A stretch of DNA of 64,000 nucleotides from Ascidiella aspersa. Taxonomy: Eukaryota. A program made the translations under genes and the position numbers. Location of the stretch: positions 34,906,001 through 34,970,000 of the forward strand of contig OZ004610.1 of assembly GCA_963924565.1 (NCBI GenBank). The letters are read 5' to 3'. Numbering within the stretch: the stretch's first letter is position 1; each line of letters starts with the position of its first letter. The notes under the pieces are model-generated. The model was not told where the DNA came from. It was given only the letters and a program-made list of their open reading frames with translations, and did not search any database. Below, piece by piece: positions 13,272-59,246 of the stretch.

Positions 13272-16200
13272 TCACACGTCGATAGTTGTGGTGATCGCTT
13301 CTTCTGTGATCACTTTCATCGCCTCGAACATTTCGCGGCAGTTGTCGGGAATCTGAAGAAAAACAATTTCGTAAAAACGCGAAGCAATAATTAGAATAAT
13401 GACGTCAAGAAATGGTACGGAAAGTTTAGGGTTAACCGAGGCAGAACAATGTAAATAATCAAAAGTTACGTCACAAACTTTAGAAATATTTCGCAAGAGC
13501 TAAAAAATTCAGCGGTGTCTAAAAAATACTATTGCTAGGTCATGATTGGGGTTGTACAATATTTGACTTTTTGTTCCGATTTCGATACTCGATGTATTGG
13601 AAAGAAATTATCGTGATCCGATATGATACAAATGACGTCATTACTACGTCAAACAAGCAAAATAGATCAAATTTAACATTCGGAGGTGTTTCCTTAAGGT
13701 TATTAAGCCAAGTCAGGCTTTGATCGGCACCGATACAACCCTAGTATCGGACCAGTACCGAGAATAGCCCAGGTCATTGACCTCACCTGCTCTTTAGCTT
13801 ACCCAAGGTCATTGACCTCACCTGCTCTTTAGGTAACCCAATGTCATTGACCTCACCTGCTCTTTAGGTTACCCAAGGTCATTGACCTCACCTGCTCTTT
13901 AGGTTACCCCAGGTCATTGACCTCACCTGCTCTTCAGGAAGCAGGAATCCGAATTCTCCGGTGTCTCTTAACTCGATGGTCCATGATAGGGGAATCCCCT
14001 GCAACCAAGTGAAATCCTTGGCACCTCCAGAAACTCCATCTGCAAAAACAAGCGGGGTTAGAAGTCGGTGGGTCGTGGGTTTAAATCGCGCCACAGCACT
14101 TACACATCGATGTAGTTCCAGGTCCGTAAGTGTATTTCATCCCAGTTGTATCTAAGATCGCCTGAGCAGCTCGTTCTGACAAGTCGTCCTTTAAAACAAA
14201 GGAAGGAGTTATAATAAATAATTATTTATGCAGGGGAAAAAGCTACTGGTCGGCATCAAACCATTTCAGGTCAACAACAACGCTCAATAGGTTTGGAACT
14301 AAAAAAATCAACAGTTTTGTTGTATTTTTCTTTTAATCTGAATAATTAGATTTAGAATCATTTAAACATGTATGCTGCTTACCAGTTGTTCAGCATTGCT
14401 GGTTGATACGTTGGAGTAGGAGAAAGGGTAGACGAACACCTGCGTGTAGCTGTGGAAAGCAATGTACGCCTGCAAAACAAAGTTACAAGGGTTAGTAGTT
14501 CAGGCCTCAACAAACTAAGTTGTGCGAATTGTTTCGTGCAAGTTTTTGCTTGTCGTGTTTTCCCATTCGAAAGTTCATTTACACACGACGTTTACTTTAC
14601 ATTAACTTAAACATTGGATAATGTTCCGAGGGTTATTGGTTCGATGCCCACCTTGGCAGTGTCGCTGTGCTTCCTTATAAGGTCAGCGCTTGCTTTAACT
14701 TCTGGTTCGGATTCTACAGATGGTCCGTGGTAGGTTTGGCTGCAGGGGTCAGGGGAAGCCCCGGGTCCACTCCACGATACGTCGTAGTTCCTGTTCGCGT
14801 CGGTTCCAACGCAAAGACTGCCAGGGTTTAGCGATCGGGTTTTCCTCCACAAGCGATTCTAAACAAAACAAGATAAATATTTGTTAAAAAAAGTAAAGGT
14901 TTTATAGGGAGTTGAAAATTATTTGTCCAACTTCACAAAAATCTTAGTTTCTTGCCCAAAAAAAGGAAAGTAAAGTTAATGGGATATGACATATTTTAGT
15001 CGATCAGCCAAAGTTTTATGTAAACTACGAGTGGAGCGAGTCGTGAAACAACCATAGCGCCGTTTTTTGGGCTGGGGTTAGTGATATTTAGTAGCATCAA
15101 TTGAATCCTTACATCGGTCCAGGTGTAATCGTATCCATCCACGTTAAGAAGCGGAATAATGACCCAAGTCATCTCGTCCATCATTCGACCAACCTGAGGG
15201 TCGCTTGCGTATTCGGTGAGCATCTGTAAACAACACAATCTTACAACACAAATCGCAGTTTGGTCGTAAATACGAACAATGTGTTTCAAATAAACAACGC
15301 TTATAATCCACCACCTATTCAGCAATGTAAAGCGTATGAAATCAGGACAAAACACGTTTAATGTTTACAATACGAAAATTAGTGAACTTTAAAACCAATA
15401 AACTCCGATTTTAAAGCATACTAGAAGTGTGTTTACCCTGTGCACAAAGTACTGGCAGAATGCAGGAGCTATCCACTCCCGGGCGTGAATTCCACAGTCG
15501 ATGATGAACTCCGGCTTGTCAGTGGACGACCCCAGGGTCAGCTTGGGGATTAACCTTCCTTCTGTGCTGAAGGCGAGTTCTTCCCATCGAGCCAATTTCG
15601 GGAATGCATTGCTGATGTCACGTGACCATTGAACGATCTAAATCGATGCAATATGTCATCTCGTGGCACGCCTGCAATCGACACTATACCTCACCTCTTC
15701 GTATGTGTGATACTTGTAGTAGTCGTAACCCTCACTTTTGCCCGATCTTTTCGAATTGTGTTGATTCTCCATCAACTCTTGCACGTTCGAGATCTTTGTC
15801 TGAATAAATGTCAAACTTGTTTTTCGGTTGGCTCGCTATTACACTTTTAACTAGAACTATACTACATAACCATTTTATTCAACAATTGTGGTTGTAGGGT
15901 TACAAAATTACTTTATCGAACAAAAGTAACTCTAAATCCTCACCTGGTAAAATAGACCTGACTTTTCTATTTTCGACAAAATTCCTTTTAGAAAATGTCT
16001 GTGACGTAATAATTACAATTATTACTCATTAGTTTAACAAAGAGTCGATTTTATTGAATTCACGCTTGACTGACCTCGGTACCCTTATGTCCACTGGGTG
16101 TCCTACTTGCACTGAATCTGCTGAGTCAGGATACCAGAAATCCACCTGACAAAAAATGCAATGTCATGCTCGAGGAATAAATTCCTAAGGTCGAGGGTTC

Positions 16201-16739
16201 GAATCCCAAGTAGGCTACTTCGGGTTGGCATATTGATTTTCGCTATATTTGCTTAAAAGTTATTTAAATATCAAAAACGAAAATTGCTTCATTGAAACGT
16301 GCATTTTCATAAAGACGTAGAAATTGTTAATAAAATGTGGAATATAATTTACTTAGTGCATATTAAGGTTGATTAAGATGTTTATGTTTTACTGACCAAT
16401 CCTGTAACTTGACCAAACTCCTGGATGACCTCCAAATGACCTTGAGTTTGTGGGAAAAGAGTCAGAACTTGATCCCTTTAAAAACAAAGTAACTTTAAAA
16501 ACTTTTCATACGAGCATTTATGCAGACTACACATTTGGTCAGTTGTAGAAGAAACTAGCGGCAAGGTAATCTAACTTGCATTGGACGCATTGCCCTGGTT
16601 TTAGGCAACAATCCTTTAAAGCAATTTGCTAAAAGCTTAACATTATACGATGGTGATTGAGCCAATAAACAACTTACCCGTCAAATCTGAGCTTTGAAGC
16701 GCAAACGACTGAAATGAGCAAGCTTAATATCAACTTCAT
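13272..16739 (-). CDS. M14A zinc carboxypeptidase (CPA/CPB/CPO family) preproenzyme, copy 1, about 12 exons
   Basis: ATG at 16739 ([15 protein letters not shown] signal peptide). Exons 16678-16739, 16397-16475, 16075-16145, 15944-15998, 15695-15799, 15437-15637, ~15112-15223, ~14652-14858, ~14382-14469, ~14104-14188, 13927-~14039, 13272-13352. Motifs: [50 protein letters not shown]. Confidence 0.93.
13768..13940 (-). repeat. 35-bp tandem repeat (5 copies) spanning a carboxypeptidase exon/intron donor junction
   Basis: CCTCACCTGC recurs at 13781, 13816, 13851, 13886 and 13921. The unit on the minus strand is AAGAGCAG|GTGAGGTCAATGACCTTGGGTAACCTA. Confidence 0.93.
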
Positions 16740-18544
16740 GGTGATCACTAAACCTTGCTTGTAGTTGCTTCTGTTGGTGAAATACTTGTGAATGTTGCAC
16801 TAAATACTTGTGAATGTTGCAACAAGTTGTCGGTGGCTCGAAGCATCTGCTTTGCTTCTCACGATGCTAACATCACGCGTCAGCATTTTACTTATCGCTT
16901 CTGTTTGGATAACAAGCGGCAGATACCTGTTTGTTCGTCAACTTTTGTTCCTTAAATAGATGGCCATCGCACCAAGAAAATCGAGGAACGTTTTAATTAA
17001 TCATCAAAATTGTGGCAAATGTAAGGTATTGACTTACATATTAAAAGTTTATTTATGTTTAAATTTGTTTATATTATTTTGCTAAAATGGGACACATCGT
17101 GTTTATTCTTACGTCACAGAAGGAATTATTCCACAATATATAGCCCACTTCCAATACCCCCAAAAAACCGAACAGGTGGTTGCTGAATGACAGTGCGAAT
17201 TAAATGAATTCGTCACCAGCTATGCGGTTATATTTGTTGCTAATGTTGTCAGTTAATTCTGGTTAAGTCATTTTTTTGCTTGTTAACGAATGTTATAAAA
17301 ATATATCTGGAACGAAAACAAATTGGCTTCCATTTTATAACTCGACTTCGTTTTGCGTTTGCGACATTTTTTCAACAAAATGTTTAATTTTTTGAACAAT
17401 CGGACTGTGCTATAACTGAATATAGCATTCCCTTTTAACAGCTGTGATAATTCTACTATCTTATCTAATATGAAGTACGTTTTATACGTCAATAAAGTCC
17501 ACTCATATGTGACCAACGCCCACAGCGAGGTCTTTTACCACAATTTCATTCCATTATGTTTTAATCTGCTTCGCCAACTGCCCGGATAATCGAGTATGCT
17601 TTCGTTTGTGCTGAGACCTAATTGTGAATATACTCAACGATCAATATCAACTAAGCGAAAAGTAAGTCATGAGTTCAAGAAGTTTATAACAGGTATTTTT
17701 GGCGGCCTGCTTATTTAGAGTCAAATATATACAATGAACGTGTGGGAGGCTTAGGCAGCCGTCGGCGCTCTTAAGAGCCAGCGCCATACTGACCCTAAAC
17801 CTTAGTCCACAAGTAAACCAATGTTTCTCAACGTCCTGTATTTTTCCAATGCAATATCCAATTTAATGGCAAGTAATGTCCGTTGTTTAAACAAACTTTA
17901 AAGTGTAGTATATTTGTCAAATGCCAAGCTCTTGTAGTGGCTTTTAACTTAGGACACTTAACACCCGTGATACCCTTAGACGAGATGGAAACATGACCAT
18001 AGGACAACTGTCTTACAATACAAAATCAATGCACAATCACAAATTGTGTTTTGAACGTGGTTTGGTTAAAAGCGTTACCGGTACCCATTAAAACGACCTA
18101 ACATGAACAGCGGCTTTGTAATCTGATTATAGAATTTGGACATAATGTGCATTATGGGGGTCACACCTTGATACTTATTAACCAATGAAATCGTCTAGAA
18201 ATGCTTTTAATAAATCGGAAATCATTTGATCGTTGATTTATGTAATCCATTCAAACTTTAGAATGTTGTTAAAGTTAAATTGAGTAAATAATTTAAACAA
18301 AACGATAAAATATTGCATTTAAATGGATCATTGTACACAAAAACCCACTCTTCCAATCCAAATTGCCAACATTTTTGTTTGATTTGAAACAAAAAAATTA
18401 AAAAAAATTAATGCAACAATTTTCTAAAAAAAAGTAACAGCTAGTTTTCACAAAAAAACACAACAAAATTGTTTTATTGTTCTAAATATTTGTCGTTGTA
18501 TGTATTTATTTGCGGAGGTTCGTTATTGCGCCGACATTATGACG

Positions 18545-23077: not shown

Positions 23078-23807
23078 GATGATCACTACACCTTGCTTTA
23101 AGTTGCTTGTGTAGGTGAAATACTTGTGAATGTTGCACTAAATACTTGTGAATGTTGCAACAAGTTGTCGGTGGCTCGAAGCATCTGCTTTGCTTCTCAC
23201 GCTGCCAACATCACGCGTCAGCATTTTACCTATCGCTTCTGTTTGAATAACAAGCGAGCGATGCGGGAGTGTTGAAAGTTAGTTCGATAACTCCGATCCT
23301 GACCATTCTGCCATCTCCTTGAATGTAATTAAACTACAATTACAGTTGCATATTTATGCACCAGTGAACTTGCAGTGGCGCTCCTTCTTGACTTGCTTTG
23401 ATAAAAAACTTGACTGGGTCTTGAGTTATTTTTACTAATGACTTGACTTGGACGTAGGTTTTTTCAAACGACTTGTTTACAACACTGTTGGGCAAAACAT
23501 CGAACTAAAACCTCAGATTTCAGATTAAGGTTAACTTCTTTCAAGCGTTCCGTTATAACGTAACAGAAAATATTTTATTTTCACCCCTGGTCCAAACGTA
23601 AACTGTAAAAAAGATTTAAAAAGAAACACAAGACGGCAGCCAAAATAAAGGAGACACAAGAACACAAGATGGCGGCCAATTCCACAGGTTTTTAACCTTC
23701 TCGCCTTTCGAGAGAACAGCGAGAAGAAGGCAGTGACGTTGCAGTTGTTGAAGGCTCTCTCGTTTTATTTTGCAAGTTTTTGCGATTTATTTTTTTAAAG
23801 TTTGAAG

Positions 23808-33600: not shown

Positions 33601-36600
33601 GCAGGTTGCTTGGGCGGAACAGCAAGTGGCAAAAGTTAGAAGAAAACGAGATTTGGTGGAGCTTGGTCGAAGCCACTTTCCTAACGACCCACTGTGGGGA
33701 CAAACCTGGTACTTGGTGAGCTCAACTTAATAATGTGCTCACATGTCTGTGTGTAACCCGACCCCTTCAAGTTTGGGGGGGATTACTGGGGTATATTCAG
33801 CTCACGATCCCGGTAATTGAGGCGCAGCTAGCCAACCCGAGGCCTCGGTAATCTGCACAAAGTGACTTTCTCCCAACTTAGTCTGCTATTTCGCCCAAAG
33901 TGAAGTCACGCTTGGGTGGGTCGCTAAAGTAGGGACGTGATATTCCAGCATCTTAGAATGCTGACAACACTAAGACATTAAATGACGTTCCGTTGATTAA
34001 ATCTAGTGCCAGCTGTGCCAATAGTAGATTGCTATCGTGCAAATATTCCCCTCATATTTGTTGGTTAACGTTAGCCGGGCTTTGATTGACAGGTCATTTA
34101 TCAACCGCACACCTGTTGCCATCCAAGCTGGAAAGTTAAACCAATGCCACGTTTTAAGTTTCCTGCGTTTCTTGTCACATTTTTGTCGGATCACTTGTAC
34201 AATCAGCGAAACAATTTGTCCCGGGGCTAAAAACACAACAAGCCAGAAAGCTTTTATGTTAGGTGGAGAAACTGGGGGGATTAGGAATGAGGTTATGGTG
34301 TAAATTATTAAGTCAAAATACACCAAACAAACGATAAATAAAATATCAAAACCAGTCAATTGCTTGTCGTTGTTCTACTTTCCATATTAAATGTCGCCGG
34401 TTGAACGTAATATTACTCTGTGCATTGAAACAACCTCAGGCGTTTGTTTTTCTTGGTAAATAGTCGCCAGAGGATGTTATCCGACACACACTGGTTTGAT
34501 TCCTGTTTTCTGCTAAATAATACGTTTATCCATCGGCGTAAGCTAAACGTCCCAGTCATATCTGCCTGTAAACCTCCTTATGGTAAATGGGATGGCATTG
34601 TATGTCCCACATACAATCTATCTTTGTATAAAATTATTTTTCATTCTACTCACAGCATTGCTCCCTAACTTTAAGGCACTTACTTATTTTAGGCCTTACG
34701 CATGTTACACCAACCTTACCCAAAATGACAGTGTTATTCACACCCGTAAGTTCGTGTAACCCCATATACTAGTTGTATGCCCCCCCTAACCCCATATACC
34801 CCTGTTTTTAGCTCCCCAGTAAGAAACCAAGCATGCGTGTAGTTGAGGCCTGGGAAAGGGGATTCACCGGTAAGAACGTTGCAGTGACGATATTGGACGA
34901 TGGAATTGAATACACGCATCCTGACCTCGAAAAGAACTACGTAAGTTGTGGGGTAAAGTAGGGGAGTTTGGGTTAAAGTAGGGGGTTGTCGGGTAAAATA
35001 GGGGGGTGTGGGGTAAAGTAGGGGGTGTGGGGTAAAGTGGGGGAGTTTGGGGTAAAGTAGGGGAGTTTGGGGTAAAGTAGGGGGGTGTGGGGTAAAGTAG
35101 GGGGTGTGGGGTAAAGTGGGGGGTGTGGGGTTAAGTAGGGGGGTGTGGGGTAAAGTAGGGGGTTGTCGGGTAAAATAGGGGGTGTGGGGTAAAGTAGGGG
35201 GTGTGGGGTAAAGTAGGGGAGTTTGGGGTAAAGTAGGGGGGTGTGGGGTAAAGTAGGGGGTGTGGGGTAAAGTGGGGGGTGTGGGGTTAAGTAGGGGGGT
35301 GTGGGGTAAAGTAGGGGGTGTGGGGTAAAGTGGGGGGTGTGGGGTTAAGTAGGGGGGTGTGGGGTAAAGTAGGGGGTGTGGGGTAAAGTGGGGGGTGTGG
35401 GGTTAAGTAGGGGGGTGTGGGGTAAAGTAGGGGGTTGTCGGGTAAAGTAGGGGGGTGTGTGGTAAAGTAGGGGGTGTGGGGTTAAGTAGGGGGGTGTGGG
35501 GTAAAGTAGGGGGGTGTGGGGTAAAGTAGGGGGGTTGAGGTAAAGTAGGGGGTGTGGGGTAAAGTGGGGGGTGTGGGGTAAAGTGGGGGGTGTGGGGTAA
35601 AGTAGGGGGGTGTGGGGTAAAGTAGGGGGGTGTGTGGTAAAGTAGGGGGTGTGGGGTTAAGTAGGGGGGTGTGGGGTAAAGTAGGGGGGTGTGGGGTAAA
35701 GTAGGGGGTGTGGGGTTAGGTGGGGGGGTGTGGGGTAAAGTAGGGGGGTCTGGGGTAAAGTAGGGGGGTTGAGGTAAAGTAGGGGGGTGTGGGGTAAAGT
35801 GGGGGGTGTGGGGTAAAGTAGGGGGGTGTGGGGTAAAGTAGGGGGGTGTGGGGTAAAGTAGGGGGTGTGGGGTAAAGTAGGGGGGTGTGGGCTAAAGTAG
35901 GGGGGTGTGGGGTAAAGACGTTGATGTTGTTCTTACTTCGGTTTTATGGCTGGAGTCCGGTATAACTTGTTAAACTAAAGACGTCCATTGTTTCGTCACA
36001 GTACCCTGGCGCTTCCGGTGACATCAACGGGAACGACGATGACCCGATCCCAAGGTTAAACCCCAGCGATGAGAACAAACACGGGACGCGATGCGCAGGA
36101 GAAGTCGCCGCCCAAGCAGACAATGGAGTTTGCAGCGTCGGCGTCGCGTATAACGCCAGGATCGGGGGTAGGTCGCATATAACGGCAGAATCGAGGGTAG
36201 GTTGCGTATAACGGCAGGATCGGGGGTAGGTCGCGTATAACGGCATGATCGAGGGTAGGTGGCGTATAACGGCAGGATCGAGGGTAGGTGGCGTATAACG
36301 GCAGGATCGGGGGTAGGTCGCGTATAACGGCAGGATCGAGGGTAGGTGGCATATAACGGCAGAATCGAGGGTAGGTGGCGTATAACGGCAGGATCGAGGG
36401 TAGGTGGCGTATAACGGCAGGATCGAGGGTAGGTGGCGTATAACGGCAGGATCGGGGGTAGGTCGCATATAACGGCAGGATCGAGGGTAGGTGGCGTATA
36501 ACGGCAGGATCGAGGGTAGGTGGCGTATAACGGCAGGATCGGGGGTAGGTCGCATATAACGGCTGGATCGAGGGTAGGTGGCGTATAACGGCAGGATCGA

Positions 36601-39600
36601 GGGTAGGTGGCGTATAACGGCAGGATCGGGGGTAGGTCGCATATAACGGCAGAATCGAGGGTAGGTGGCGTATAACGGCAGGATCGAGGGTAGGTTGCGT
36701 ATAACGGCAGGATCGGGGGTAGGTGGCGTATAACGGCAGGATCGAGGGTAGGTGGCGTATAACGGCAGGATCGGGGGTAGGTCGCGTATAACGGCAGGAT
36801 CGAGGGTAGGTGGCATATAACGGCAGAATCGAGGGTAGGTGGCGTATAACGGCAGGATCGAGGGTAGGTTGCGTATAACGGCAGGATCGGGGGTAGGTCG
36901 CATATAACGGCAGAATCGAGGGTAGGTGGCGTATAACGGCAGGATCGAGGGTAGGTGGCGTATAACGGCAGGATCGAGGGTAGGTGGCGTATAACGGCAG
37001 GATCGGGGGTAGGTCGCGTATAACGGCAGGATCGAGGGTAGGTGGCATATAACGGCAGAATCGAGGGTAGGTGGCGTATAACGGCAGGATCGAGGGTAGG
37101 TTGCGTATAACGGCAGGATCGGGGGTAGGTCGCATATAACGGCAGAATCGAGGGTAGGTGGCGTATAACGGCAGGATCGAGGGTAGGTTGCGTATAACGG
37201 CAGGATCGGGGGTAGGTCGCATATAACGGCAGAATCGAGGGTAGGTGGCGTATAACGGCAGGATCGGGGGTAGGTCGCGTATAACGGCAGGATCGGGGGT
37301 AGGTCGCATATAACGGCAGAATCGAGGGTAGGTGGCGTATAACGGCAGGATCGAGGGTAGGTTGCGTATAACGGCAGGATCGGGGGTAGGTCGCATATAA
37401 CGGCAGAATCGAGGGTAGGTGGCGTATAACGGCAGGATCGGGGGTAGGTGGCGTATAACGGCAGGATCGAGGGTAGGTTGCGTATAACGGCAGGATCGGG
37501 GGTAGGTCGCGTATAACGGCATGATCGAGGGTAGGTGGCGTATAACGGCAGGATCGGGGGTAGGTCGCGTATAACGGCAGGATCGAGGGTAGGTTGCGTA
37601 TAACGGCAGGATCGGGGGTAGGTCGCATATAACGGCAGAATCGAGGGTAGGTGGCGTATAACGGCAGGATCGAGGGTAGGTTGCGTATAACGGCAGGATC
37701 GGGGGTAGGTCGCATATAACGGCAGAATCGAGGGTAGGTGGCGTATAACGGCAGGATCGGGGGTAGGTCGCGTATAACGGCAGGATCGAGGGTAGGTGGC
37801 GTATAACGGCAGGATCGGGGGTAGGTCGCATATAACGGCAGGATCGAGGGTAGGTGGCGTATAACGGCAGGATCGAGGGTAGGTGGCGTATAACGGCAGG
37901 ATCGGGGGTAGGTCGCATATAACGGCAGGATCGAGGGTAGGTGGCGTATAACGGCAGGATCGAGGGTAGGTGGCGTATAACGGCAGGATCGGGGGTAGGT
38001 CGCATATAACGGCTGGATCGAGGGTAGGTGGCGTATAACGGCAGGATCGAGGGTAGGTGGCGTATAACGCCAGGATCGGGGGGGTAGGCGGCATATAACG
38101 GCAGGATCGAGGGTAGGTGGCGTATAACGGCAGGATCGGGGGTAGGTCGCGTATAACGGCAGGATCGAGGGTAGGTGGCGTATAGCGGCAGGATCGGGGG
38201 TAGGTGGCGTATAGCGGCAGGATCGGGGGTAGGTGGCGTATAACGCCAGGATCGGGGGTAGGCGGCATATAACGGCAGGATCGAGGGTAGGCGGCGTATA
38301 ACGGCAGTATCGGGGGTAGGTGGCGTATAACGGCAGGATCGAGGGTAGGTGGCGTATAACGCCAGGATCGGGGGTAGGTCGCGTATAACGGCAGTATCGG
38401 GGGTAGGTGGCGTATAACGGCAGGATCGGGGGTAGGTGGCGTATGATCGAGGGTAGGCGGCGTATAACGGCAGGATCGAGGGTAGGTGGCGTATAACGCC
38501 AGGATCGGGGGTAGGTGGCGTATAACGGCAGGATCGAGGGTAGGCGGCGTATAACGGCAGGATCGAGGGTAGGTCGCGTATAACGGCAGGATCGGGGGTA
38601 GGTGGCGTATAACGGCAGTATCGGGGGTAGGTGGCGTATGATCGAGGGTAGGCGGCGTATAACGGCAGGATCGAGGGTAGGTGGCGTATAACTCCAGGAT
38701 CGGGGGTAGGTGGCGTATAACGGCAGGATCGGGGGTAGGTGGCGTATAACGGCAGGATCGAGGGTAGGCGGCGTATAACGGCAGGATCGAGGGTAGGTCG
38801 CGTATAACGGCAGGATCGGGGGTAGGTGGTGCGTATAACGGCAGGATCGGGGTAGGTGGCGTATAACGAAAGGATCGGGGGTTGGTCGCGTATAACGCCA
38901 GGATCGAGGGTAGGTGGTGCGTATAACGCCAGGATCGGGGGTAGGTGGCGTATAACGGCAGGATCGGGGGTAGGTGGCGTATAACGACAGGATCGGGGGT
39001 AGGTCGCGTATAACGCCAGGATCGAGGGTAGGTGGTGCGTATAACGCCAGGATCGGGGGTAGGTGGCGTATAACGGCAGGATCGGGGTAGGTGGCGTATA
39101 ACGACAGGATCGGGGTAGGTGGCGTATAACGACAGGATCGGGGGTAGGTCGCGTATAACGGCATGATCGAGGGTAGGTGGCGTATAACGGTAGGATCGGG
39201 GGTAGGTGGCGTATAACGGCAGGATCGAGGGTAGGTGGCGTATAACGCCAGGATCGAGGGTAGGTGGTGCGTATAACGCCAGGATCGGGGGTAGGTGGCG
39301 TATAACGGCAGGATCGGGGGTAGGTGGCGTATAACGGCAGGATCGGGGGTAGGTGGCGTATAACGACAGGATCGGGGGTAGGTCGCGTATAACGCCAGGA
39401 TCGGGGGTAGGTCGCGTATAACGCCGGGATCTGGGATAGGTCGCATGTTGGACGGCCCAGTCGATTTTATTTGTTGTTTGTGTGCAGGTGTTCGCATGTT
39501 GGACGGCCCAGTCGATTTATTTGTTGTTTGTGTGCAGGTGTTCGCATGTTGGACGGCCCGGTTACTGACGCGGTTGAAGCAGCTTCGATTGGTTTGAAAC

Positions 39601-42600
39601 CGCAGAACGTTGACATCTACAGCGCATCTTGGGGACCGGACGATGATGGAAGAACTGTCGATGGACCGGCGAGATTAGCTAAGATCGCTTTTGAGGAAGG
39701 AGTTAAGTTGGTGAGTTTAACGAACTGAACAGTTCGCATTTAACAAAATGACTGGTAATTGTTGTGTTAAAAAAGTACTTGCCTTTATTACTCAAGTTGG
39801 GAAAGAGTTCAAATACGGAGTTGTCATAATTTTCACCTTCTGTGGAGTTGTGACGTCGTGTGTATTGTTTTTAATAATTAATGTGATTGGTTATTGCGCG
39901 CTACGTCGTGACTCATTATGATCCAGAACCTTTGTATTGAGTTGGTTTTAGTCGTGAATGCAAAATTATGTTGCTGGTGTCTGAAGTTAAAACACTACAT
40001 TTACCTGGATTCCCAATCAAAGCAACCCTTTCTATGTGCACTTGTGGTTATGTGCAGGGCCGCGGAGGTAGAGGCTCGATCTTCGTGTGGGCTTCAGGTA
40101 ACGGAGGGAGGCATGAGGACAACTGCAACTGCGATGGTTACACCAACAGCATATTCACCCTCTCCATCAGCAGCACGACTGAGAGTAAGAAGAAACCGTG
40201 GTACTCTGAGTCGTGCTCGTCCACCTTGGCAGCAACCTACAGCAGTGGAACCTTCGGCGAGAAGCAAGTGGTGAGTAAGTGAGGTGACACGTAACACGTA
40301 ACACTTACATCACAACAACTTGTGACGTGTACAGGTGACGACAGACCTACGTCACAGGTGCACCAACAAGCACACCGGCACCTCAGCGTCGGCTCCACTG
40401 GCCGGAGGGATATGCGCGCTGGCCCTGGAAGCGAAGTGAGTCACAACTCGTTGTTAATATTAATGCGGTATTTACTTGGTTTAAGTGATTCACAGCTTCG
40501 TTAGATTACGTCGCTCTACTTTGTTTCGTTGCCTCAGAATGATGGTTGAAATATTAATGTTGTTAATGTTGGCCGACTTAGACAACTTATGTGATGACTT
40601 CAACATCTTTATAAATATTTAAAATTCATTTAATGTTTCGACAAAACCCCGACCCCCCTACAACCACTGACCCCGATGCCCCCTAGCCCCGGTAACTCTG
40701 AATTTAGCACACAGTCTTTCCTCACGTCATCGGTTGTTACCTCATGACGTCATCACATGACGTAACCGTGTGCTTCCCTTTAGTGGTGACCTCACGTGGC
40801 GCGACATGCAGCACCTAGTGGTGAGAACTGCCAGGTCGGAAGGACTCGAGTCGGATTGGAAGACAAACGCCGTCGGGAGGCCTGGTGAGTGTGACGTCAC
40901 TATTGTAGCAATGTAAGGTGATTGTCACGCGTTTGTTTTGTCATAGTAAGTCACTCGTTCGGTTACGGTCTGATGGACGCGCTCGGGATGGTTGACATGG
41001 CAACCAACTGGACGCTTGTTCCTAAGCAACACATCTGCAACATTTCGGTGATTTCCCCTGAACAACCACCCCGAATATTCAGCTCGGGGAATACCCTAAG
41101 GGTGCCTGTCCTGGTAGGTGGTTCCCCGCTTCACCCGCGTGTGTGGGTTGCTTACCCCCAACTTGTGCTAACCCTGTTGTTGTTGCCCCAGGTTTCATCG
41201 TGTGACGACGGAGGGGTGATGGTGGATCGGCTGGAACATGTGCAAGCTGTCCTCACCCTCCGCAACCAACGCAGGGGCGACCTCACGATCACCCTAACTT
41301 CACCCCTCGGAACCCGATCGACCCTGCTCGGCAGAAGGTGAACATCGCAGCTTTGGTTCACTCGACCTTGAACTAATGTCTACTTGAACTAATTGCTGTT
41401 GATTTCAGACACAGCGATATGTCGACGCGGGGCTTCACCAAGTGGCCCTTTATGACGACACACTCGTGGGACGAAGACCCAAGGGGAACCTGGATTCTTG
41501 AGATTAAAGACTCCAACACCCCAACATCGGGTAAGTCCCTAACTTTCCCCAACATCGGGTAAGCCCCTAACTTCACCCAACATCGGGTAAGCCCCTAACT
41601 TCACCCAACATCGGGTAAGCCCCTAACTTCACCCAACATCGGGTAAGCCCCTAACTTCACCCAACATCGGGTAAGCCCCTAACTTCCCCCAACACCGGTA
41701 AGCCCCTAACTTCACCCAACATCGGTTAAGCCCCTAACTTCCCCCAACATCGGGTAAGCCCCTAACTTCCCCGAACATCGGGTAAGCCCCTAACTTCCCC
41801 AACATCGGGTAAGCCCCTAACTTCCCCCAACATCGGGTAAGCCCCTAACTTCACCCAACATCGGGTAAGCCCCTAACTTCACCCAACATCGGGTAAGCCC
41901 CTAACTTCACCCAACATCGGGTAAGCCCCTAACTTCACCCAACATCGGGTAAGCCCCTAACTTCCCCCAACATCGGGTAAGCCCCTAACTTCACCCAACA
42001 TCGGGTAAGCCCCTAACTTCACCCAACATCGGTTAAGCCCCTAACTTCCCCCAACATCGGTTAAGCCCCTAACTTCACCCAACATCGGTTAAGCCCCTAA
42101 CTTCACCCAACATCGGGTAAGCCCCTAACTTCCCCGAACATCGGGTAAGCCCCTAACTTCCCCAACATCGGGTAAGCCCCTAACTTCCCCCAACATCGGG
42201 TAAGCCCCTAACTTCACCCAACATCGGTTAAGCCCCTAACTTCACCCAACATCGGGTAAGCCCCTAACTTCCCCGAACATCGGGTAAGCCCCTAACTTCA
42301 CCCAACATCGGGTAAGCCCCTAACTTCCCCCAACATCGGGTAAGCCCCTAACTTCCCCCAACATCGGGTAAGCCCTTAACTTCCCCGAACATCGGGTAAG
42401 CCCCTAACTTCCCCAACATCGGTTAAGCCCCTAACTTCACCCAACATCGGGTAATCCCCAAACTTCCCCCAACATCGGGTAAGCCCCTAACTTCACCCAA
42501 CATCGGGGGTAGATACTTAAACGTCCATAGTAGGATTCTAAATCCAAGCGTTTTCAGAACGCTTCCTATTGGCTGGAATTTTATGACGTCACAGATATAA

Positions 42601-45600
42601 TTTTATGACGTAACAGACGATCAGCTGAACGGCCTACTAGATAATTTAGTTTTCTTATAGAAGAAAAATACCAAACGGGTATTTTGAACATATTTTTAAC
42701 TCTGATAATAGGACACGTCGAGCCGCTGCAATGCTGTCGTACCACATTTTCGTCCGGGGGCTTATATTGCTAACATTATTCGTGTTAGCGCTTGGGCTTA
42801 CGTGGGTCAAGTATTATTATATTTATTAATAATGTTTAACCAAACCAAAACCTAAACCAGTCCCTAACCAAAATAATATGCATTGTGGTGCGATTTTTAA
42901 TGAGGCTCTTTTAATTTATGCCTACATGTTGAAGCACATTTTGTTACTTGGTTAACCACAAAGAGCCGCGCACCTTACACACATGAAACAAAAAGAATAG
43001 CCTCTCCCTGTTATTTTTTTTATTTAATTTGTTTGCGTGTATCGTGTTTCAAAAGTATTGTTAAAGAAACGTTGGCCTTAAGGCAAACAGACTAACTCGG
43101 AACCGGCAATAATCCACACCATAAAGTTGACCAAACGAAATCGAAACATTCTAAAAAATCATATTTGCAACATGAACGGAAGAGCCGTACACAACTGGGT
43201 TAAAAGCCGCATGTGGCGACCCCTGATATATATATTCTAGAAACAACTGTTTTCACAAAAAATGTATTTGTTTTTAAATGTGCACATACCTAACATATGC
43301 ATTGACCATGCTTTCTTTATTACACCAAAAATTGACAACACTAGATAAGGAGACTTACGTATTAAAAAAACAGAAAAAATCACAAAAAACACTTCACAGA
43401 TTAAATAAAAATGACTTTAAACTTTGCATACACATTCTCCGGCTTATGTGAATTTGCAATTAATATGATTAAAATTAAACTGTAATATTTGAAATAATTC
43501 ATTTAAAATCAGTTTCAGTAATTCAGGCTGTGATGCAAGCAACATCTAGCCATGACATGAGGCTTGCATCCAAGATCTTGGCTCAACAGGGACAGTCACT
43601 TTTTCACCTGAGCTACATAGGGCTCCATGGGAACGGGTTAAGGAACAACCATACCACATTGCCTGTTCCCTTCTGTTACATTTACAACTCCATTGAAGAT
43701 CATCTAAAAGACTATTCATAGCATGTTAAACCTAGTTAGTTATAAATAGAAATGCCTATCAAATTAAGAAAGTTGAAATAAAATGCATTAGAACACAAAA
43801 TAAATATTATGTATACAACAACATCATAGTTTAGTTTTCACCCCTTTAGGTCGTAACCAAACGGTAAAGTGCATTCTTACAATTTGAATCCTAATTGCTT
43901 TAATGTCATTCATGTTATGGACCAACAAATCAATATTTACCATTAAAAAACTTATAACATTCTGGATTTGAAACTACCATTTAATAATACCTCTGGTATT
44001 CTACTTTGAACATCCCATTCCTATCAATCAGGCATTTTTTTTAAATGAAATTTACTGTTTAGGACTTTAGGATCTTAAATATATAATTTAGATTTTAGAT
44101 GTTTCTTTAGATTATTATAAAAAAATGTTGTGTAATCTAAAATTGTGGCAGATTTAATGTCAAGGATAATTATTTTAGTAATTTCTTAAGTTTAAAATTT
44201 TTGCTAATTGAAAAACAATTAATTAGTGAGTTAATAAATCAAGATTTCCATAACTGGTCCATATTCAGTAAAATGTTTTTTAAAACAGCAAATCTAAAGC
44301 TTAAGGCAAAACCCGTTATGTCCAAGCGTATTAAATATTTTCAAAAATAGTTTTTAGATTTCTTTATAATAAATCTAGATGTTTTTGATTTAATTTATTA
44401 TCGTTAAAAAAATGGTAACTATGATTGAAACAGTACACACCAACTGTACACAAGCAGAAAATCCTTCTTAGTTTGTTGCACTTTAATCATACTCAAAAAT
44501 TGCTAATTAAGATCTTAATGAAAATCAGAAAATGAGGCAAAAATTGTAAGTGTTGTAGATATTGCACCAAAGTGCCAACTTAAAATACAATCAAGTCAAT
44601 CAGTCTTATATAGCTAATCCTGAGGTGTGTTTAACAATCACTGGGTAAAGTTGTGTGCTTCAATTAGCCTACTTAGACCACCACAACAGATTCATAATCA
44701 ACTAATTCTAACCTAAAGGAAAGTGGCACGCCGCCTGGTAAATAATACAAAGTTTGTCACACAATTGCAGATTTGATCATCCTATTTATTCAAGTTGTAT
44801 GATATTTGCAATCAGGAAACTGCAGGCTATTGTTACTAAAATGGCAGCTAGAAATGAGTAAAAGGCAGCCAAAAAAAATTGCCAATTAAGTTGGTTGTTC
44901 AAACGCACATGACAAAAATATTTATGTTTTAATAAATAATAAACAAAACGAAGTTATTAAGTTTAGTACGTATACCCTGCATAGTTGCGTACGGTCATTT
45001 AAGCAGACTGTACGCAATTTTTTTGTAATGGCCTGTTTTGGCTTTGCACACCTGCATTCACACATTGGTCAAGTTTAAACACACTTGAACTAATTTTTGA
45101 GACATATACTGCTAACGCTTGTTTTTTAACATAACAGTGGTGTGGTTATTTTGCGCTTCTTTTACGGCGTAAAATTCAAAACGGTGTCAAAGTATTTACC
45201 CATAAGCCAATTAATTTTCTCCTATTTACCGACACGACAATAAACGATGTTTTGACTTTTTATTTTTCGTCAAGTACTACAGTACATTTGCGCTTAATAA
45301 GAATCTATTACGTCATAAAATTTCAGCCAATAGGAAGCGTTCTGAAAACGCTTGGATTTGGAATCCTACTATGGACGTTTAAGTATCTACCAACATCGGG
45401 TAAGCCCCTAACTTCCCCCAACATCGGGTAAGCCCCTAACTTCCCCCAACATCGGGTAAGCCCCTAACTTCACCCAACATCGGGTAAGCCCCTAACTTCA
45501 CCCAACATCGGGTAAGCCCCTAACTTCACCCAACATCGGGTAAGCCCCTAACTTCACCCAACATCGGGTAAGCCCCTAACTTCACCCAACATCAGGTAAG

Positions 45601-47329
45601 CCCCTAACCCTAACCCAACATCGGGTAAACCCCTAACTTCACCCAACATCGGGTAAGCCCCTAACTTCCCCCAACATCGGGTAAGCCCCTAACTTCCCCC
45701 AACATCGGGTAAGCCCCTAACTTCACCCAACATCGGGTAAGCCCCTAACTTCACCCAACATCGGGTAAGCCCCTAACTTCACCCAACATCGGGTAAGCCC
45801 CTAACTTCCCCCAACATCGGGTAAGCCCCTAACTTCCCCCAACATCGGGTAAGCCCCTAACTTCACCCAACATCGGGTAAGGCCCTAACTTCACCCAACA
45901 TCGGGTAAGCCCCCAACTTCATCCAACATCGGGTAAGCCCCAGCGCTGTACATACAAGGTGTAGTGAGATATAGCATCGATCACAGCAAGCTTTTCCTTG
46001 TAGGAACTCTTTCTGGTTTCAACTTGATCCTCCACGGTACAGTGAAGTCCGACTGGGGAATCCCCACACCAAAGGACGTCCAGCTTCCCGATGAAGCAAC
46101 AGATTCACCACAGGTTGCAACATTTTAACCACTTTAACACTTAGTTCTACAAAGTTTCAAATTCGATGTTTTTTGCAGCAAGTTGAGCCGACAGCGCCCC
46201 CGAGTGTCGCCACCACCCCCAGTCCTTCAGGTAACTTCCATTGTTCCTTCCTTTGTTCCTTCCTTTCACATTTTACTTTTTCAATAACACAGCTGTTAGC
46301 TTCGCAGTTAGAGTAACAAGCAAAACTTATTTCATCACAACGAGCTAACAGCACGCTATGACGCAACAATGGGGTAGACTAAATAAAATTACATGTGTTT
46401 AAATCATTGATGTGACCGTATATGGGTCAAAATGCCAAAGACCCCGATAAAATCAAACACATACGATGTTTAAATGTTGGTGTGATGCTGCACGATTGTG
46501 ACGTAACACTACTTTCTATTCAGCTCACGTTGTCGAGAATTGCGAGATCGAACTTTCATCGGAGCCTGGATGTTTGGGTGAGCATTTGCTTGTTGTTGTT
46601 GTTTTATTGTTGCTTAATTTTGTTATTGTTGTTGTTGTTGCTGTAATGTTGTTGCCGCCCGCAACTGCAGCAACCACAAACTTGTGCCTCGATGTTGTGG
46701 TCGTTGTACTTTCGGCCGCTCACTAACTCCCCTCCAGTAATTTGTTTCTTTTTGGCTTTTCTCCTCACGTCCTGACGTCAACCACAACTGATGACGTCAC
46801 AGTGTGTTCCGCTGGTTTCGCGCTGAGTGGATCGAAGTGCGTGGCGAGCTGCGAGGTCGGCCACTACGCGGTGCAAGAGGGCGGTGGCCTGGTGTGCCGG
46901 GGATGCCCCTCATTCTGTCACAGCTGCGCCGGGTCACGCTTCATTGATTGCGTACAATGCGTGTCTGGGGCCAGGATGGGGGAGGGGAACAGGTGCTTCC
47001 CCCCGGAACCCCCGCCCACACCCACCAGGGTCTACTACATGGTCGCGGTCTCCATCCTAGCGCTCGCCTTCCTTTGTTGCGCAATAATATTCGTCATCAA
47101 CAAACGACGCAGCGCCTCTAGCGGAGACGCGTACAAATACATCCCGTCGGAAGATGGCGCTATTTCGAGGCTTATAAACGACTCGGGTTTGGAATATTAC
47201 GATGACCTTGACGAGTACGAGGACAATCCTGTCAAGGTCGCCACCGGGGGACGCACCAAGCGTAAGAATGGCCACGTGGTTCGGACTTCGGGGAAATCCC
47301 CTTTGCTCGACCACGAGGGTGGTTTCTAG
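30667..47329 (+). CDS. furin: furin-like proprotein convertase (S8B), 16 coding exons
   Basis: Exons 30667-30867, 30971-31075, 33605-33715, 34812-34940, 36002-36167, 39538-39710, 40058-40270, 40335-40435, 40784-40884, 40947-41113, 41192-41337, 41409-41530, 46004-46113, 46179-46230, 46524-46577, 46803-47329 splice in frame. Features: RRKR propeptide site, ILDDG (Asp), HGTRCAG (His), ASGNGG (oxyanion Asn), TGTSAS (Ser), P domain with RRGDL, Cys-rich region, TM helix, and a tail with YKYI and an acidic cluster. Exact PCSK orthology was not tested. Confidence 0.93.
31382..31556. mobile_element. near-perfect foldback (arms about 80 bp) with degenerate hammerhead-like cores, in furin intron 2
   Basis: GTAATAAGAATATCAAAGCCCATACAGAAGTAGGTATCATTTTGAACGTTTCGAAT... 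is mirrored by its reverse complement ending GATATTCTTATTAC. Related copies lie at 9468-9577 and about 648-715. Confidence 0.8.
34941..35917 (+). repeat. G-rich 21-22-bp minisatellite (about 45 copies) filling furin intron 4
   Basis: Unit GTGGGGTAAAGTAGGGGG(G)T. It starts directly at the GTAAGT donor. Confidence 0.95.
36143..39446 (+). repeat. 29-bp minisatellite (about 113 copies) made of the furin exon 5 end plus donor site
   Basis: Unit GCGTATAACGGCAGGATCG(A/G)GG|GTAGGT(G/C). The first copy is the coding sequence AYNARIG plus the real donor at 36168. Confidence 0.97.
39441..39559 (+). repeat. 50-51-bp tandem duplication of the furin intron 5 acceptor and exon 6 start
   Basis: TCGCATGTTGGACGGCCC occurs at 39441, 39492 and 39542. 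TTGTTGTTTGTGTGCAG|GTG ends at 39487 and 39537. Confidence 0.92.
41521..45940 (+). repeat. 28-bp minisatellite (about 35 + 20 copies) made of the furin exon 12 end plus donor, split by a transposon
   Basis: Unit CCCAACATCGG|GTAAGCCCCTAACTTC(A/C). Blocks at 41521-42507 and 45392-45940. Confidence 0.96.
42508..45391. mobile_element. non-autonomous Mutator-like (MULE) DNA transposon, 2.9 kb
   Basis: About 85-bp TIRs beginning GGTAGATACTTAAACGTCCATAGTAGGATTC, with few mismatches. 9-bp duplication AACATCGGG at 42499-42507 and 45392-45400. AT-rich interior with no transposase ORF. Confidence 0.82.
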
Positions 47330-58528: not shown

Positions 58529-58722
58529 CAGGGCTGCGGACTCGGGACTCGGGACTCGGGACTCGGGACTCGGGACTCGGGACTCGGGACTCGGGACTCG
58601 GGACTCGGGACTCGGGACTCGGGACTCGGGACTCGGGACTCGGGACTCGGGACTCGGGACTCGGGACTCGGGACTCGGGACTCGGGTAGGAACCACGTAA
58701 AACTACATGAGTCCCGAGTCCG
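58529..58722 (+). repeat. (GGGACTC)n heptamer array (about 21 copies) expanded from a transposon terminus
   Basis: Begins with CAGGGCTGCGGA, the same terminus as the 47960 MITE. A perfect 7-bp array follows, then an inverted GAGTCCCGAGTCCG. Confidence 0.9.
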
Positions 58723-59112: not shown

Positions 59113-59246
59113 TATAATATATAGCTTATATTTTGCTTTATTGTTGTCTCAATTTAAAGAAAGCGTCTGCTGAGAACCACCTGATGCCATAGACAAGTGG
59201 TTCTTACTCTTTTTCAGCCGTGTCCCCCTTGGTAATTTTTCCATGC

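What the first reader, a model, noticed from the sequence alone, without database searches (positions are those of the whole stretch)
13768..45940. Recurrent splice-junction-templated minisatellites: introns filled with copies of their own exon/intron boundary
Seen: four unrelated tandem repeats in two unrelated genes each have a unit that is the local splice junction. Three copy an exon 3' end plus GT donor (35 bp in carboxypeptidase 1; 29 bp and 28 bp in furin) and one copies an acceptor plus exon start (50 bp). A fifth array begins exactly at a donor (34941), and a small duplication of the intron start occurs at 50346-50385. The arrays always extend into the intron. No junction-spanning unit length is a multiple of 3, and reading through the donor arrays meets stops. 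Inference: splice junctions are a tiny fraction of intronic DNA yet seed most long arrays here. That points to a junction-targeted amplification process (for example co-transcriptional R-loop or slippage at splice sites) and to a splicing system that tolerates dozens of decoy sites. I know of no named system of this kind, but cannot exclude prior description.
Basis: partly seen in the sequence, partly recalled or inferred. Interest (0 to 1): 0.82.

Follow-up and report, generated by a model that had tools for sequence, protein, structure and literature searches.

The report
Splice-junction minisatellites filling short introns
Several introns of a furin-like gene and a carboxypeptidase gene are filled with tandem copies of their own exon/intron boundary, a real and extreme case of something already described in a few human genes, and probably ordinary minisatellite growth in very short introns.

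Summary
Four locus-specific tandem arrays have units that span a real splice junction. They are 35 bp x4.8 in a carboxypeptidase gene, and 29 bp x113.6, 28 bp x55 and 50 bp x2.4 in a furin-like convertase gene. A fifth array (20 bp x49.6) starts 6 nt after a donor. About 107 decoy donors sit in one intron.

- **Short host introns.** The introns are ancient and were originally about 50-90 bp. A tolerated duplication of 20-50 bp there almost has to include a junction: 3.0 of 6 expected, 5 seen, p=0.07.
- **Ordinary growth.** The arrays show a flanking microhomology, variant repeats and multi-unit periodicity.
- **Prior description.** This kind is already in the literature for human F7, IFI6, CBS, LMNB2 and PDGFA (PMC1557585).
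- **Other genomes.** I found the same thing in furin-like genes of two other genomes.
- **Rarity here.** Such arrays are rare in this genome. Perfect-consensus donor triplets occur at 4 loci in 308 Mb. Looser donor-motif arrays, seen on one chromosome, lie towards its ends.

The preference for short introns inside the furin gene is not explained. No genome-wide test of enrichment was possible, and no read or RNA evidence could be obtained. The scan's first readers noted similar repeated junctions on two other pieces of this genome; those notes are unchecked.

The parts
13771..13938 (-). 35-bp x4.8 minisatellite spanning the donor of a carboxypeptidase (Peptidase_M14) exon. The exon's last base is 13927. 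Each unit is a GT...CAG module, giving 1 authentic and 4 decoy CAG|GTGAGG donors.
   Evidence: TRF; sequence; Pfam; unit anatomy. The paralogue at 19211-19420 has the same intron position but no array.
34941..36001 (+). Furin-like intron 4 (1061 bp). The 20-bp x49.6 G-rich array at 34947-35917 starts at intron position +7, and its units begin with a donor-like GTAAAG. About 90 bp of the intron is non-array.
   Evidence: TRF; sequence; tblastn; locus-specific; 39- and 59-bp super-periods.
36146..39431 (+). 29-bp x113.6 minisatellite made of 22 nt of exon 5 end plus 7 nt of intron start. The authentic donor GT is at 36168-36169. 107 of 112 units keep GT. The first unit is flanked by a GTCGC microhomology, and a three-unit (87 bp) higher-order pattern is present.
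   Evidence: matches occur only at this locus in the 308-Mb genome.
39441..39559 (+). 50-bp x2.4 repeat made of 28 nt of intron 3' end (pyrimidine tract plus CAG) and 22 nt of exon 6 start. The authentic acceptor AG is at 39536-39537, with two decoy acceptors upstream. Each unit is a GT...AG module.
   Evidence: The intron position before VRMLDG is conserved in many other organisms.
41520..42507 (+). 28-bp x35 minisatellite, first block, made of 11 nt of exon 12 end plus 17 nt of intron start. The authentic donor is CGG|GTAAGT at 41531; the decoys are GTAAGC.
   Evidence: P_proprotein domain exon; locus-specific.
42508..45391 (.). 2.88-kb DNA transposon with 89-bp terminal inverted repeats, inserted into the 28-bp array and splitting it in two.
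   Evidence: at least 25 genomic copies at 85-98% identity.
45390..45941 (+). 28-bp x19.7 minisatellite, second block of the same array. It ends 62 bp before the acceptor; exon 13 starts at 46004.
50345..50391 (+). Two copies of a ~17-nt motif (GGTGCGTTGCTAGGGGT) about 25 bp apart, starting at a putative donor. The exon status was not verified.
   Evidence: Sequence; below TRF threshold.

Best explanation
These are ordinary, locus-specific intronic minisatellites.

**Birth.** Each began as a small tandem duplication, by replication slippage or template switching at a short microhomology, that happened to straddle a splice junction of an ancient and originally very short intron (about 50-90 bp). 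A duplication wholly inside an exon breaks the protein. One that straddles a junction is harmless as long as the outermost, exon-adjacent site is used. In introns this short, most tolerated duplications of 20-50 bp must therefore contain a junction.

**Growth.** The duplications then grew to 0.2-3.3 kb by unequal exchange or slippage, in what is probably a distal, minisatellite-prone part of the chromosome.

**Splicing.** The first donor (or the last acceptor) is used, as shown experimentally for the human F7 intron 7 VNTR. Any use of a decoy gives a premature stop and would presumably be cleared by nonsense-mediated decay.

**Shown here:** junction-spanning units, locus specificity, ancient intron positions, internal array structure, stops after decoy use, and occurrence in other genomes.

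**Inferred:** the slippage and unequal-exchange mechanism, which sites are actually used, the decay of mis-spliced RNA, and the regional effect.
For: - **Junctions fixed** by homology and Pfam.
- **Ancient intron.** The intron before VRMLDG is conserved across many organisms, so this is not intron gain.
- **Short ancestral introns.** Non-array remainders are about 90, 52 and 79 bp. Unexpanded neighbouring introns in the same gene are 58-68 bp.
- **Geometry.** It predicts 3.0 junction-spanning arrays of 6; 5 are seen, p=0.07.
- **Microhomology.** GTCGC lies 29 nt apart, in exon 5 and at intron +5, and flanks the first 29-bp unit and the array's end.
- **Variant-repeat structure.** Only 5 of 29 positions vary much. 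There are three-unit higher-order repeats, and ancestral-type units sit at both array ends. The 20-bp array has 39- and 59-bp super-periods.
- **Decoys not eroded.** Decoy GTs are as conserved as other positions, 107 of 112. So there is no sign of selection for or against them.
- **A transposon inside one array** and **a paralogue without the array** show real, derived, datable events.
- **Uniform seeding.** Small two-copy duplications are spread uniformly.
- **Same architecture elsewhere.**
  - L021 in this genome.
  - L031, an ENA contig: 66/81 bp x3 at the same acceptor.
  - L032, GCA_009805615.1: 107 bp x7.9 across a donor of a furin-like gene.
- **Literature precedent** and 5'-most donor use (PMC1557585).
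- **Rare and distal.** Donor-motif arrays are rare, and on C1 they lie towards the chromosome ends.
Against: - **Geometry is not enough.** It does not explain why the four furin arrays all sit in three short introns and none in about 5 kb of longer introns of the same gene (p 7e-6 to 4e-4, post hoc).
- **Two arrays in long introns.** The carboxypeptidase and L021 arrays span donors of introns of about 330-355 bp, where the geometric expectation is only 17-26%.
- **No expression or population data.** No RNA evidence shows which sites are used. No reads confirm copy numbers.
- **Distal location only bounded.** The window's distal position on C4 is bounded, not measured.
Confidence: 0.6

Rival explanations
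1. Junction-biased amplification. DNA at or next to splice sites is a preferred place for minisatellite birth or, more likely, expansion. Possible causes are transcription- or splicing-coupled instability (polymerase pausing, R-loops), or exon-derived sequence making a unit more expansion-prone than the AT-rich intron DNA around it.
For: - In the window, 4-5 of about 8 substantial arrays are at junctions against about 5% expected.
- Inside the furin gene, long introns carry no array.
- Two arrays span donors of introns over 300 bp.
- One of only two substantial arrays in 111 kb of unrelated kinase loci has a perfect CAG|GTAAGT in its unit.
- AGGTAAGT triplets give 8 matches at 4 loci against 0 for the reversed control.
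- Expanded arrays have 46-60% GC against about 38% background, while the small unexpanded duplications are AT-rich.
Against: - Conditioned on the host intron, the excess is not significant (p=0.07).
- Strand skew is opposite in different arrays.
- Two-copy seeds are not junction-biased.
- Such arrays are rare genome-wide. There are about 10 GGTRAG arrays on a contig of at least 41 Mb and 4 perfect-consensus loci in 308 Mb. That is of the order expected if about 2% of non-exonic DNA lies within a unit length of a donor; this is my own rough estimate.
- The window was chosen because it shows the pattern.
- AT-rich donor-type arrays also expand elsewhere.
Confidence: 0.2
2. Selected function. The decoy-site arrays are kept because they do something. 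They might lengthen introns that are too short, load U1 snRNP along the transcript, or tune convertase output through unproductive splicing coupled to nonsense-mediated decay.
For: - Decoy donor GTs are well kept, 107 of 112.
- The authentic donor of the 28-bp array (GTAAGT) is a better consensus match than every decoy (GTAAGC).
- The 35-bp and 50-bp units are GT...AG modules that could in principle be removed stepwise.
Against: - GT is no better conserved than the neighbouring unit positions, as expected from recent homogenisation alone.
- In L021 the decoys are stronger than the presumed authentic site.
- The carboxypeptidase paralogue works without an array.
- The homologous junctions in other species are mostly array-free.
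- There is no expression data.
Confidence: 0.08
3. Assembly artefact. The arrays, or their copy numbers, are produced or inflated by mis-assembly of repetitive reads.
For: No read evidence could be obtained. Long near-identical arrays are error-prone in assemblies.
Against: - Units carry structured variants and higher-order periodicity rather than perfect copies.
- A dispersed transposon with intact inverted repeats sits inside one array.
- Both array edges join unique exon and intron sequence in the correct reading frame.
- The same architecture occurs in independent assemblies of other organisms.
Confidence: 0.07
4. Intron gain caught in the act. The introns were created by tandem duplication of an AGGT-containing exon segment (the Rogers / Hellsten model).
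For: The start of intron 5 is a near-copy of the start of exon 6, so the genomic sequence reads like the spliced exon 5-exon 6 junction followed by an insert. The 35-bp and 50-bp units are GT...AG modules.
Against: - The intron before VRMLDG is present in many distant organisms.
- It is present in L031 and L032.
- The carboxypeptidase intron is shared with its paralogue.
- All arrayed introns interrupt the alignment to homologues exactly where exons end.
Confidence: 0.03

Closest known systems
Human F7 intron 7 37-bp VNTR, and the similar minisatellites in IFI6 (6-16), CBS intron 13, LMNB2 and PDGFA intron 4 (PMC1557585, Borensztajn et al. 2006)
   Same: It is an intronic minisatellite whose first monomer spans the exon-intron boundary, so the authentic donor is followed by identical pseudo-donors. 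The array extends into the intron. In F7 only the 5'-most site is used, although the pseudo-sites are functional.
   Different: The scale and clustering differ. There are about 107 decoys in one intron (F7 has 4-8, IFI6 has 25), and four to five such arrays in two neighbouring genes. One array spans an acceptor rather than a donor. The arrays make up nearly the whole intron because the ancestral introns were only about 50-90 bp. Site usage is untested here.
Intron gain or intron sliding by tandem duplication of an AGGT-containing segment (PMC3265369 Hellsten et al. 2011; PMC2891723 Lehmann et al. 2010; PMC4974935)
   Same: A tandem duplication that includes a splice junction or proto-splice site yields duplicated functional-looking sites. 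The 35-bp and 50-bp units are GT...AG modules.
   Different: No new intron was created here. The intron positions are ancient. The duplications only enlarged existing introns.
Classical GC-rich hypervariable minisatellites of vertebrates
   Same: Units of 20-50 bp, interspersed variant repeats, higher-order periodicity, GC content above background, and a tendency to lie towards chromosome ends.
   Different: The repeat unit here is templated by a functional junction of the host gene. Hypervariability between individuals was not tested.
Recursive-splicing ratchet points (juxtaposed AG|GT)
   Same: The end of each 35-bp unit (CAG|GTGAGG) and each 50-bp unit (CAG|GTGTTC) recreates a juxtaposed acceptor and donor.
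   Different: There is no RNA evidence. The modules (35 and 50 nt) are shorter than the shortest normal introns seen in this gene (58 nt). The resemblance is structural only.

Membership tests
Junction-spanning intronic minisatellite (F7 IVS7 type) | Head-to-tail array with a unit of about 10-100 bp | tested here: met
   TRF periods 20, 28, 29, 35 and 50 bp, with 2.4 to 113.6 copies and 89-98% matches.
Junction-spanning intronic minisatellite (F7 IVS7 type) | The first monomer contains the authentic exon-intron boundary | tested here: met
   Exon ends and starts were fixed by tblastn and Pfam. Arrays start 12, 22 and 11 nt inside exons, and the 50-bp array ends 22 nt inside an exon. The 20-bp array starts at intron +7 and does not meet this criterion.
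Junction-spanning intronic minisatellite (F7 IVS7 type) | The splice-site sequence is reiterated in the intron as pseudo-sites | tested here: met
   107 of 112 units (29 bp), 44 of 54 units with exact CGG|GTAAG (28 bp) and 4 of 4 decoy units (35 bp) keep the donor. There are two decoy acceptors, each with its pyrimidine tract.
Junction-spanning intronic minisatellite (F7 IVS7 type) | Only the outermost (5'-most) donor is used in vivo | not testable with these tools
Indirectly, every decoy use modelled gives a premature stop.
Junction-spanning intronic minisatellite (F7 IVS7 type) | Copy number polymorphic between alleles (VNTR) | not tested
   There is one assembly only, and no reads or second haplotype were available.
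Intron gain by tandem duplication (AGGT model) | The intron lies at a position absent from relatives or paralogues | tested here: not met
   Genomic fragments from many organisms show unrelated read-through sequence before GV-RMLDG. L031 and L032 have the intron. The carboxypeptidase paralogue shares the intron position.
Dispersed satellite, introner or MITE-derived intron sequence | The same unit is present at many loci in the genome | tested here: not met
   The 29-, 28- and 20-bp array sequences match only their own locus in the 308-Mb genome. The 35-bp unit was not searched.
Recursive splicing site | Juxtaposed AG|GT used stepwise, shown by RNA intermediates | not testable with these tools
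   The AG|GT juxtaposition is present at unit ends of the 35- and 50-bp arrays. No RNA data.

The most novel reading that the evidence does not exclude
In this genome, and perhaps generally, DNA at splice junctions is intrinsically more likely than other neutral DNA to grow into long minisatellites. The cause would be transcription- or splicing-coupled instability, or the presence of exon-derived sequence in the unit. Junction-spanning arrays would then exceed the intron-length-aware neutral expectation several-fold. This furin-like gene would be a natural hotspot where more than 100 functional-looking donors are ignored by the spliceosome.
Probability: 0.18. Interest if true: 0.7.

Novelty: new member of a known kind. 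Interest (0 to 1): 0.36.

Why it matters
As a class this is known, so the value lies in the example. One intron has about 107 near-identical donors, of which 48 match the authentic site in the -3 to +6 nonamer (GGG|GTAGGT). A neighbouring junction has triplicated acceptors.

This makes a stringent natural test of how splice sites are chosen by position rather than by sequence, whether by 5'-to-3' scanning, first-come-first-served or exon definition. It also measures how much unproductive splicing a cell tolerates.

It is a practical warning for gene annotation. The annotated product at L032 runs from the exon into the repeated junction copies.

If a length-aware genome-wide test did show an excess at junctions, it would point to a link between transcription or splicing and minisatellite instability.

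Tried and rejected
- **Genome-wide array sampling.** I planned 200 x 10 kb by the fetch from genomes. Those loci were also biased towards intron-poor kinase genes.
- **Pattern counts as an enrichment test.**
  - GGTRAG x3 gave 674 matches against 1721 for the reversed control.
  - The control is dominated by one dispersed transposon family and a 10-bp satellite.
  - Match counts are dominated by a few long arrays, so I rejected the comparison as uninformative.
- **Chromosome length.** A random 14-mer pattern only bounds C4. The largest coordinate seen other than the window is 34.64 Mb.
- **Repeat content of the long furin introns.** The search was saturated by one MITE family, so the age of those introns stayed open.
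- **Look-ups with no useful result.** P0005 and the window's own 60-aa ORF are not on record. P0002's contig has no DNA available. P0003's contig is only 806 bp.
- **Explanations rejected on evidence.**
  - Intron gain by duplication.
  - A dispersed repeat family.
  - A lariat or circular-RNA rolling-circle origin, because the units contain exon sequence and are far too short. This last rejection is by inference.
- **Joined spliced protein.** Exons were searched one by one by reference.

Full report
**What is there**

The window is eukaryotic and lies at C4:34,906,001-34,970,000 of a 308.6-Mb assembly with nine chromosome-sized contigs. Other first-reader notes on this genome mention vanabin-like genes and trans-splicing. 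That would fit an ascidian, but I did not verify the organism.

| Position | Unit | Copies |
|---|---|---|
| 13771-13938 | 35 bp | 4.8 |
| 34947-35917 | 20 bp | 49.6 |
| 36146-39431 | 29 bp | 113.6 |
| 39441-39559 | 50 bp | 2.4 |
| 41520-42507 | 28 bp | 35.4 |
| 45390-45941 | 28 bp | 19.7 |

**Genes and junctions**

Three full-length convertases were recovered with one exon as query. Aligned to the window by tblastn, they map a 14-exon furin-like gene on the plus strand from 30721 to about 47326. Pfam confirms Peptidase_S8 and P_proprotein on single exons, and Peptidase_M14 on the minus-strand exon next to the 35-bp array.

Reading the sequence at each boundary gives the following:

- Exon 4 ends at 34940, with donor GT at 34941-34942.
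- Exon 5 is 36002-36167, phase 1, ending GGG|GTAGGT.
- Exon 6 is 39538-39710.
- Exon 12 ends at 41530, with CGG|GTAAGT.
- Exon 13 starts at 46004.
- The carboxypeptidase exon ends at 13927 on the minus strand, with CAG|GTGAGG.

The 35-, 29- and 28-bp arrays begin 12, 22 and 11 nt inside their exons. The 50-bp array ends 22 nt inside exon 6. The 20-bp array has no exon sequence and starts at intron position +7.

The two 28-bp blocks are one array. It was split by a 2.88-kb DNA transposon with 89-bp terminal inverted repeats, which belongs to a family of at least 25 copies.

**The arrays are secondary growths in old, short introns**

- The intron between IGG and VRMLDG is ancient. Most genomic fragments of convertase genes from other organisms show unrelated read-through sequence right up to that point.
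- The carboxypeptidase paralogue 5 kb away has the same intron position but no array. The 35-bp array is therefore younger than the gene duplication.
- Without the arrays and the transposon, introns 4, 5 and 12 would be about 90, 52 and 79 bp. This is the same class as the unexpanded 58-68-bp introns elsewhere in the gene.
- The 20-, 28- and 29-bp array sequences match nothing else in the genome. They are not a dispersed satellite or introner.

**Anatomy points to ordinary minisatellite dynamics**

In the 29-bp array, 24 of 29 positions are nearly invariant and five carry interspersed variants. A three-unit (87 bp) higher-order pattern fills the first two thirds. Units like the exon copy sit at both ends.

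The motif GTCGC occurs in exon 5 and again 29 nt downstream at intron +5. It brackets the first unit and the array's end. This is the signature of a microhomology-mediated duplication.

That downstream GTCGC lies in the leftmost copy of the 50-bp acceptor repeat. The acceptor duplication therefore probably came first. This ordering is an inference.

The decoy GT is intact in 107 of 112 units, no better and no worse than neighbouring positions. I see no sign of selection on the decoys.

GC skew is strongly positive over the 20- and 29-bp arrays and negative over the 28-bp array. This does not fit a single R-loop-type strand bias.

**Consequences for splicing (inferred)**

Of the decoys in intron 5, 48 match the authentic donor in the -3 to +6 nonamer (GGG|GTAGGT) and 54 differ only at -3. 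Site strength therefore cannot be what picks the right one. Intron retention meets a stop within 6-16 codons. Each of the first six decoys modelled in the 29- and 28-bp arrays gives a premature stop.

The documented behaviour of the human F7 intron 7 VNTR is the best available model. There the pseudo-sites are functional but only the 5'-most donor is used (PMC1557585).

The 35-bp and 50-bp units are GT...AG modules, so stepwise removal is conceivable. At 35 and 50 nt, however, they are shorter than any normal intron seen in this gene.

**Is it more than chance, and is a junction-targeted process needed?**

*Window-level test.* If seeds fell uniformly on non-exonic DNA, each array would have about a 5% chance of spanning a junction. 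With 4 of 8 substantial arrays doing so, p is about 6e-4. This test is post hoc, on a window picked for this feature.

*Conditioning on the host intron changes the picture.* For an intron of length I and a unit of length p, the share of tolerated duplications that span a junction is 2(p-1)/(I+p-1).

| Array | Expected share spanning a junction |
|---|---|
| 29 bp | 0.70 |
| 50 bp | 0.97 |
| 28 bp | 0.51 |
| 20 bp | 0.37 |
| 35 bp | 0.17 |
| 51 bp (L021) | 0.26 |

The expected total is 3.0 of 6. Five are observed, p=0.07.

*Seeding looks uniform.* About 35 small two-copy duplications are scattered over the window and are not at junctions.

*What geometry leaves unexplained.* All four furin arrays sit in three short introns and none in about 5 kb of longer introns (p 7e-6 to 4e-4, post hoc). 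Part of that long-intron DNA is a MITE, and more of it may be young insertions, but I could not show this.

**Independent cases**

- **Same genome, L021.** In 111 kb of unrelated kinase loci, only two substantial arrays exist.
  - One, L021 at C4:0.158 Mb, is 51 bp x4.2. Its unit carries CAG|GTAAGT.
  - It starts 32 nt before a CAA|GTAAGT that follows an acceptor-bounded open stretch.
  - Its exon status is probable, not proven. Its unit length is a multiple of 3.
- **Same genome, unchecked notes.** First readers noted similar repeated junctions on two other pieces of this genome (s1-787254, s1-788278).
- **Other genomes, furin-like genes.**
  - L031, an ENA metagenome contig: a 66/81-bp unit, three identical copies, across the very same acceptor.
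  - L032, NCBI GCA_009805615.1: a 107-bp unit x7.9 across the donor after SSLEKQ.
  - P0002 also shows a repeated exon piece after read-through.
- **Rate.** That is 3 of 130 genomic fragments, with some ranking bias. By my own rough estimate, this rate is of the order expected from ordinary tandem-duplication density.

**Genome-wide rarity and location**

Three consecutive AGGTAAGT at 22-52-bp spacing occur at only 4 loci in 308 Mb, against 0 for the reversed control. The looser GGTRAG x3 gives about 10 true arrays on contig C1, which is at least 41 Mb long. Fifteen of the 16 sites lie within 0.7-5.5 Mb or 31.9-40.9 Mb of that contig.

L021 is 0.16 Mb from one end of C4. The window is the highest coordinate I saw on C4. 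Lower bounds for the nine large contigs sum to about 298 of 308.6 Mb, so the window is probably, but not demonstrably, near the other end.

A regional, recombination-linked propensity for minisatellite growth would account for the clustering. This is an inference.

**Comparison with what is known**

The kind is described: minisatellites whose first monomer spans an exon-intron boundary in human F7, IFI6, CBS, LMNB2 and PDGFA (PMC1557585). Duplication of splice junctions as a route to new or shifted introns is also described (PMC3265369, PMC2891723). It does not apply here, because the introns are old.

What is unusual here is the degree:

- about 107 decoys in one intron;
- an acceptor-spanning member;
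- arrays that constitute almost the whole intron;
- four to five cases in 32 kb.

**Limits**

- There is no unbiased genome sample.
- Pattern-count controls were uninformative.
- The organism was not identified.
Exons were searched singly by reference.

**Verdict**

This is a real and striking example of a known phenomenon. It is most likely neutral minisatellite growth seeded across the junctions of very short introns (confidence about 0.6). A junction-biased expansion process is not excluded (about 0.2).

Noticed in passing
window 42508-45391: A 2.88-kb non-autonomous-looking DNA transposon with 89-bp terminal inverted repeats (96% complementary). It is inserted in the 28-bp array. At least 25 copies at 85-98% identity lie on many chromosomes.
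   Followed up: partly
window 13934-16918 versus 19221-23256: Tandem carboxypeptidase (Peptidase_M14) paralogues with blocks of 88-97% nucleotide identity. Only the first copy carries the junction array.
   Followed up: partly
window 31347-31570: A palindromic ~210-bp MITE in furin intron 2. More than 1,400 first-look candidates exist in the genome, and the scored copies are 87-95% identical.
   Followed up: partly
window 59207-63998: A Ty3/gypsy-type LTR retrotransposon with an uninterrupted 1383-aa ORF (RT, RNase H, integrase) and LTR-like repeats at both ends.
   Followed up: partly
L031:9963-10178 (ENA ERZ25073769 contig): Another eukaryote's furin-like gene has three 100%-identical copies of a 66/81-bp unit spanning the same acceptor (before VRMLDG).
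   Followed up: yes
L032:18527-19361 (NCBI GCA_009805615.1, VIIS01000670.1): A 107-bp x7.9 array spans the donor after SSLEKQ of a furin-like gene. The recorded 295-aa product (P0090) runs from the exon into the repeated junction copies, so the gene model is probably wrong there.
   Followed up: partly
L021:91-304 (G000:C4:157676-157889): A 51-bp x4.2 array with a perfect CAG|GTAAGT in each unit, about 1.1 kb upstream of a kinase ORF. It is one of only four loci in the genome with three spaced AGGTAAGT.
   Followed up: partly
G000:C4:15576269 and C6:17418659: Two loci share the same ~49-bp unit containing AGGTAAGT. They could be a duplicated gene or a small dispersed repeat.
   Followed up: no
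G000:C2:1148315-1149824: A long 35-bp array (at least 43 units) whose unit contains GTG|GTGAGT. Its flanks could not be fetched, so its relation to an exon is unknown.
   Followed up: no
window 45596-45612, and the 28-bp unit generally: The 28-bp unit contains CCCTAA, and one unit reads as two and a half telomere-type repeats. The L021 unit contains TTAGGGG. This may be coincidence.
   Followed up: no
window 55353-55444: A 30-bp x3.1 in-frame Gly-rich coding repeat in the last exon of the gene at about 50-55 kb. It is the only substantial array inside an exon, and its unit length is a multiple of 3.
   Followed up: partly
window 58538-58686: A perfect (GGACTCG) x21 heptanucleotide array.
   Followed up: no
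G000:C1, many sites (e.g. 1104334, 9121104, 11153877): A dispersed element with internal GAATGG-rich subrepeats in inverted pairs, and a (GAATGGTACC)n satellite. Together these swamped the reversed-pattern control.
   Followed up: no
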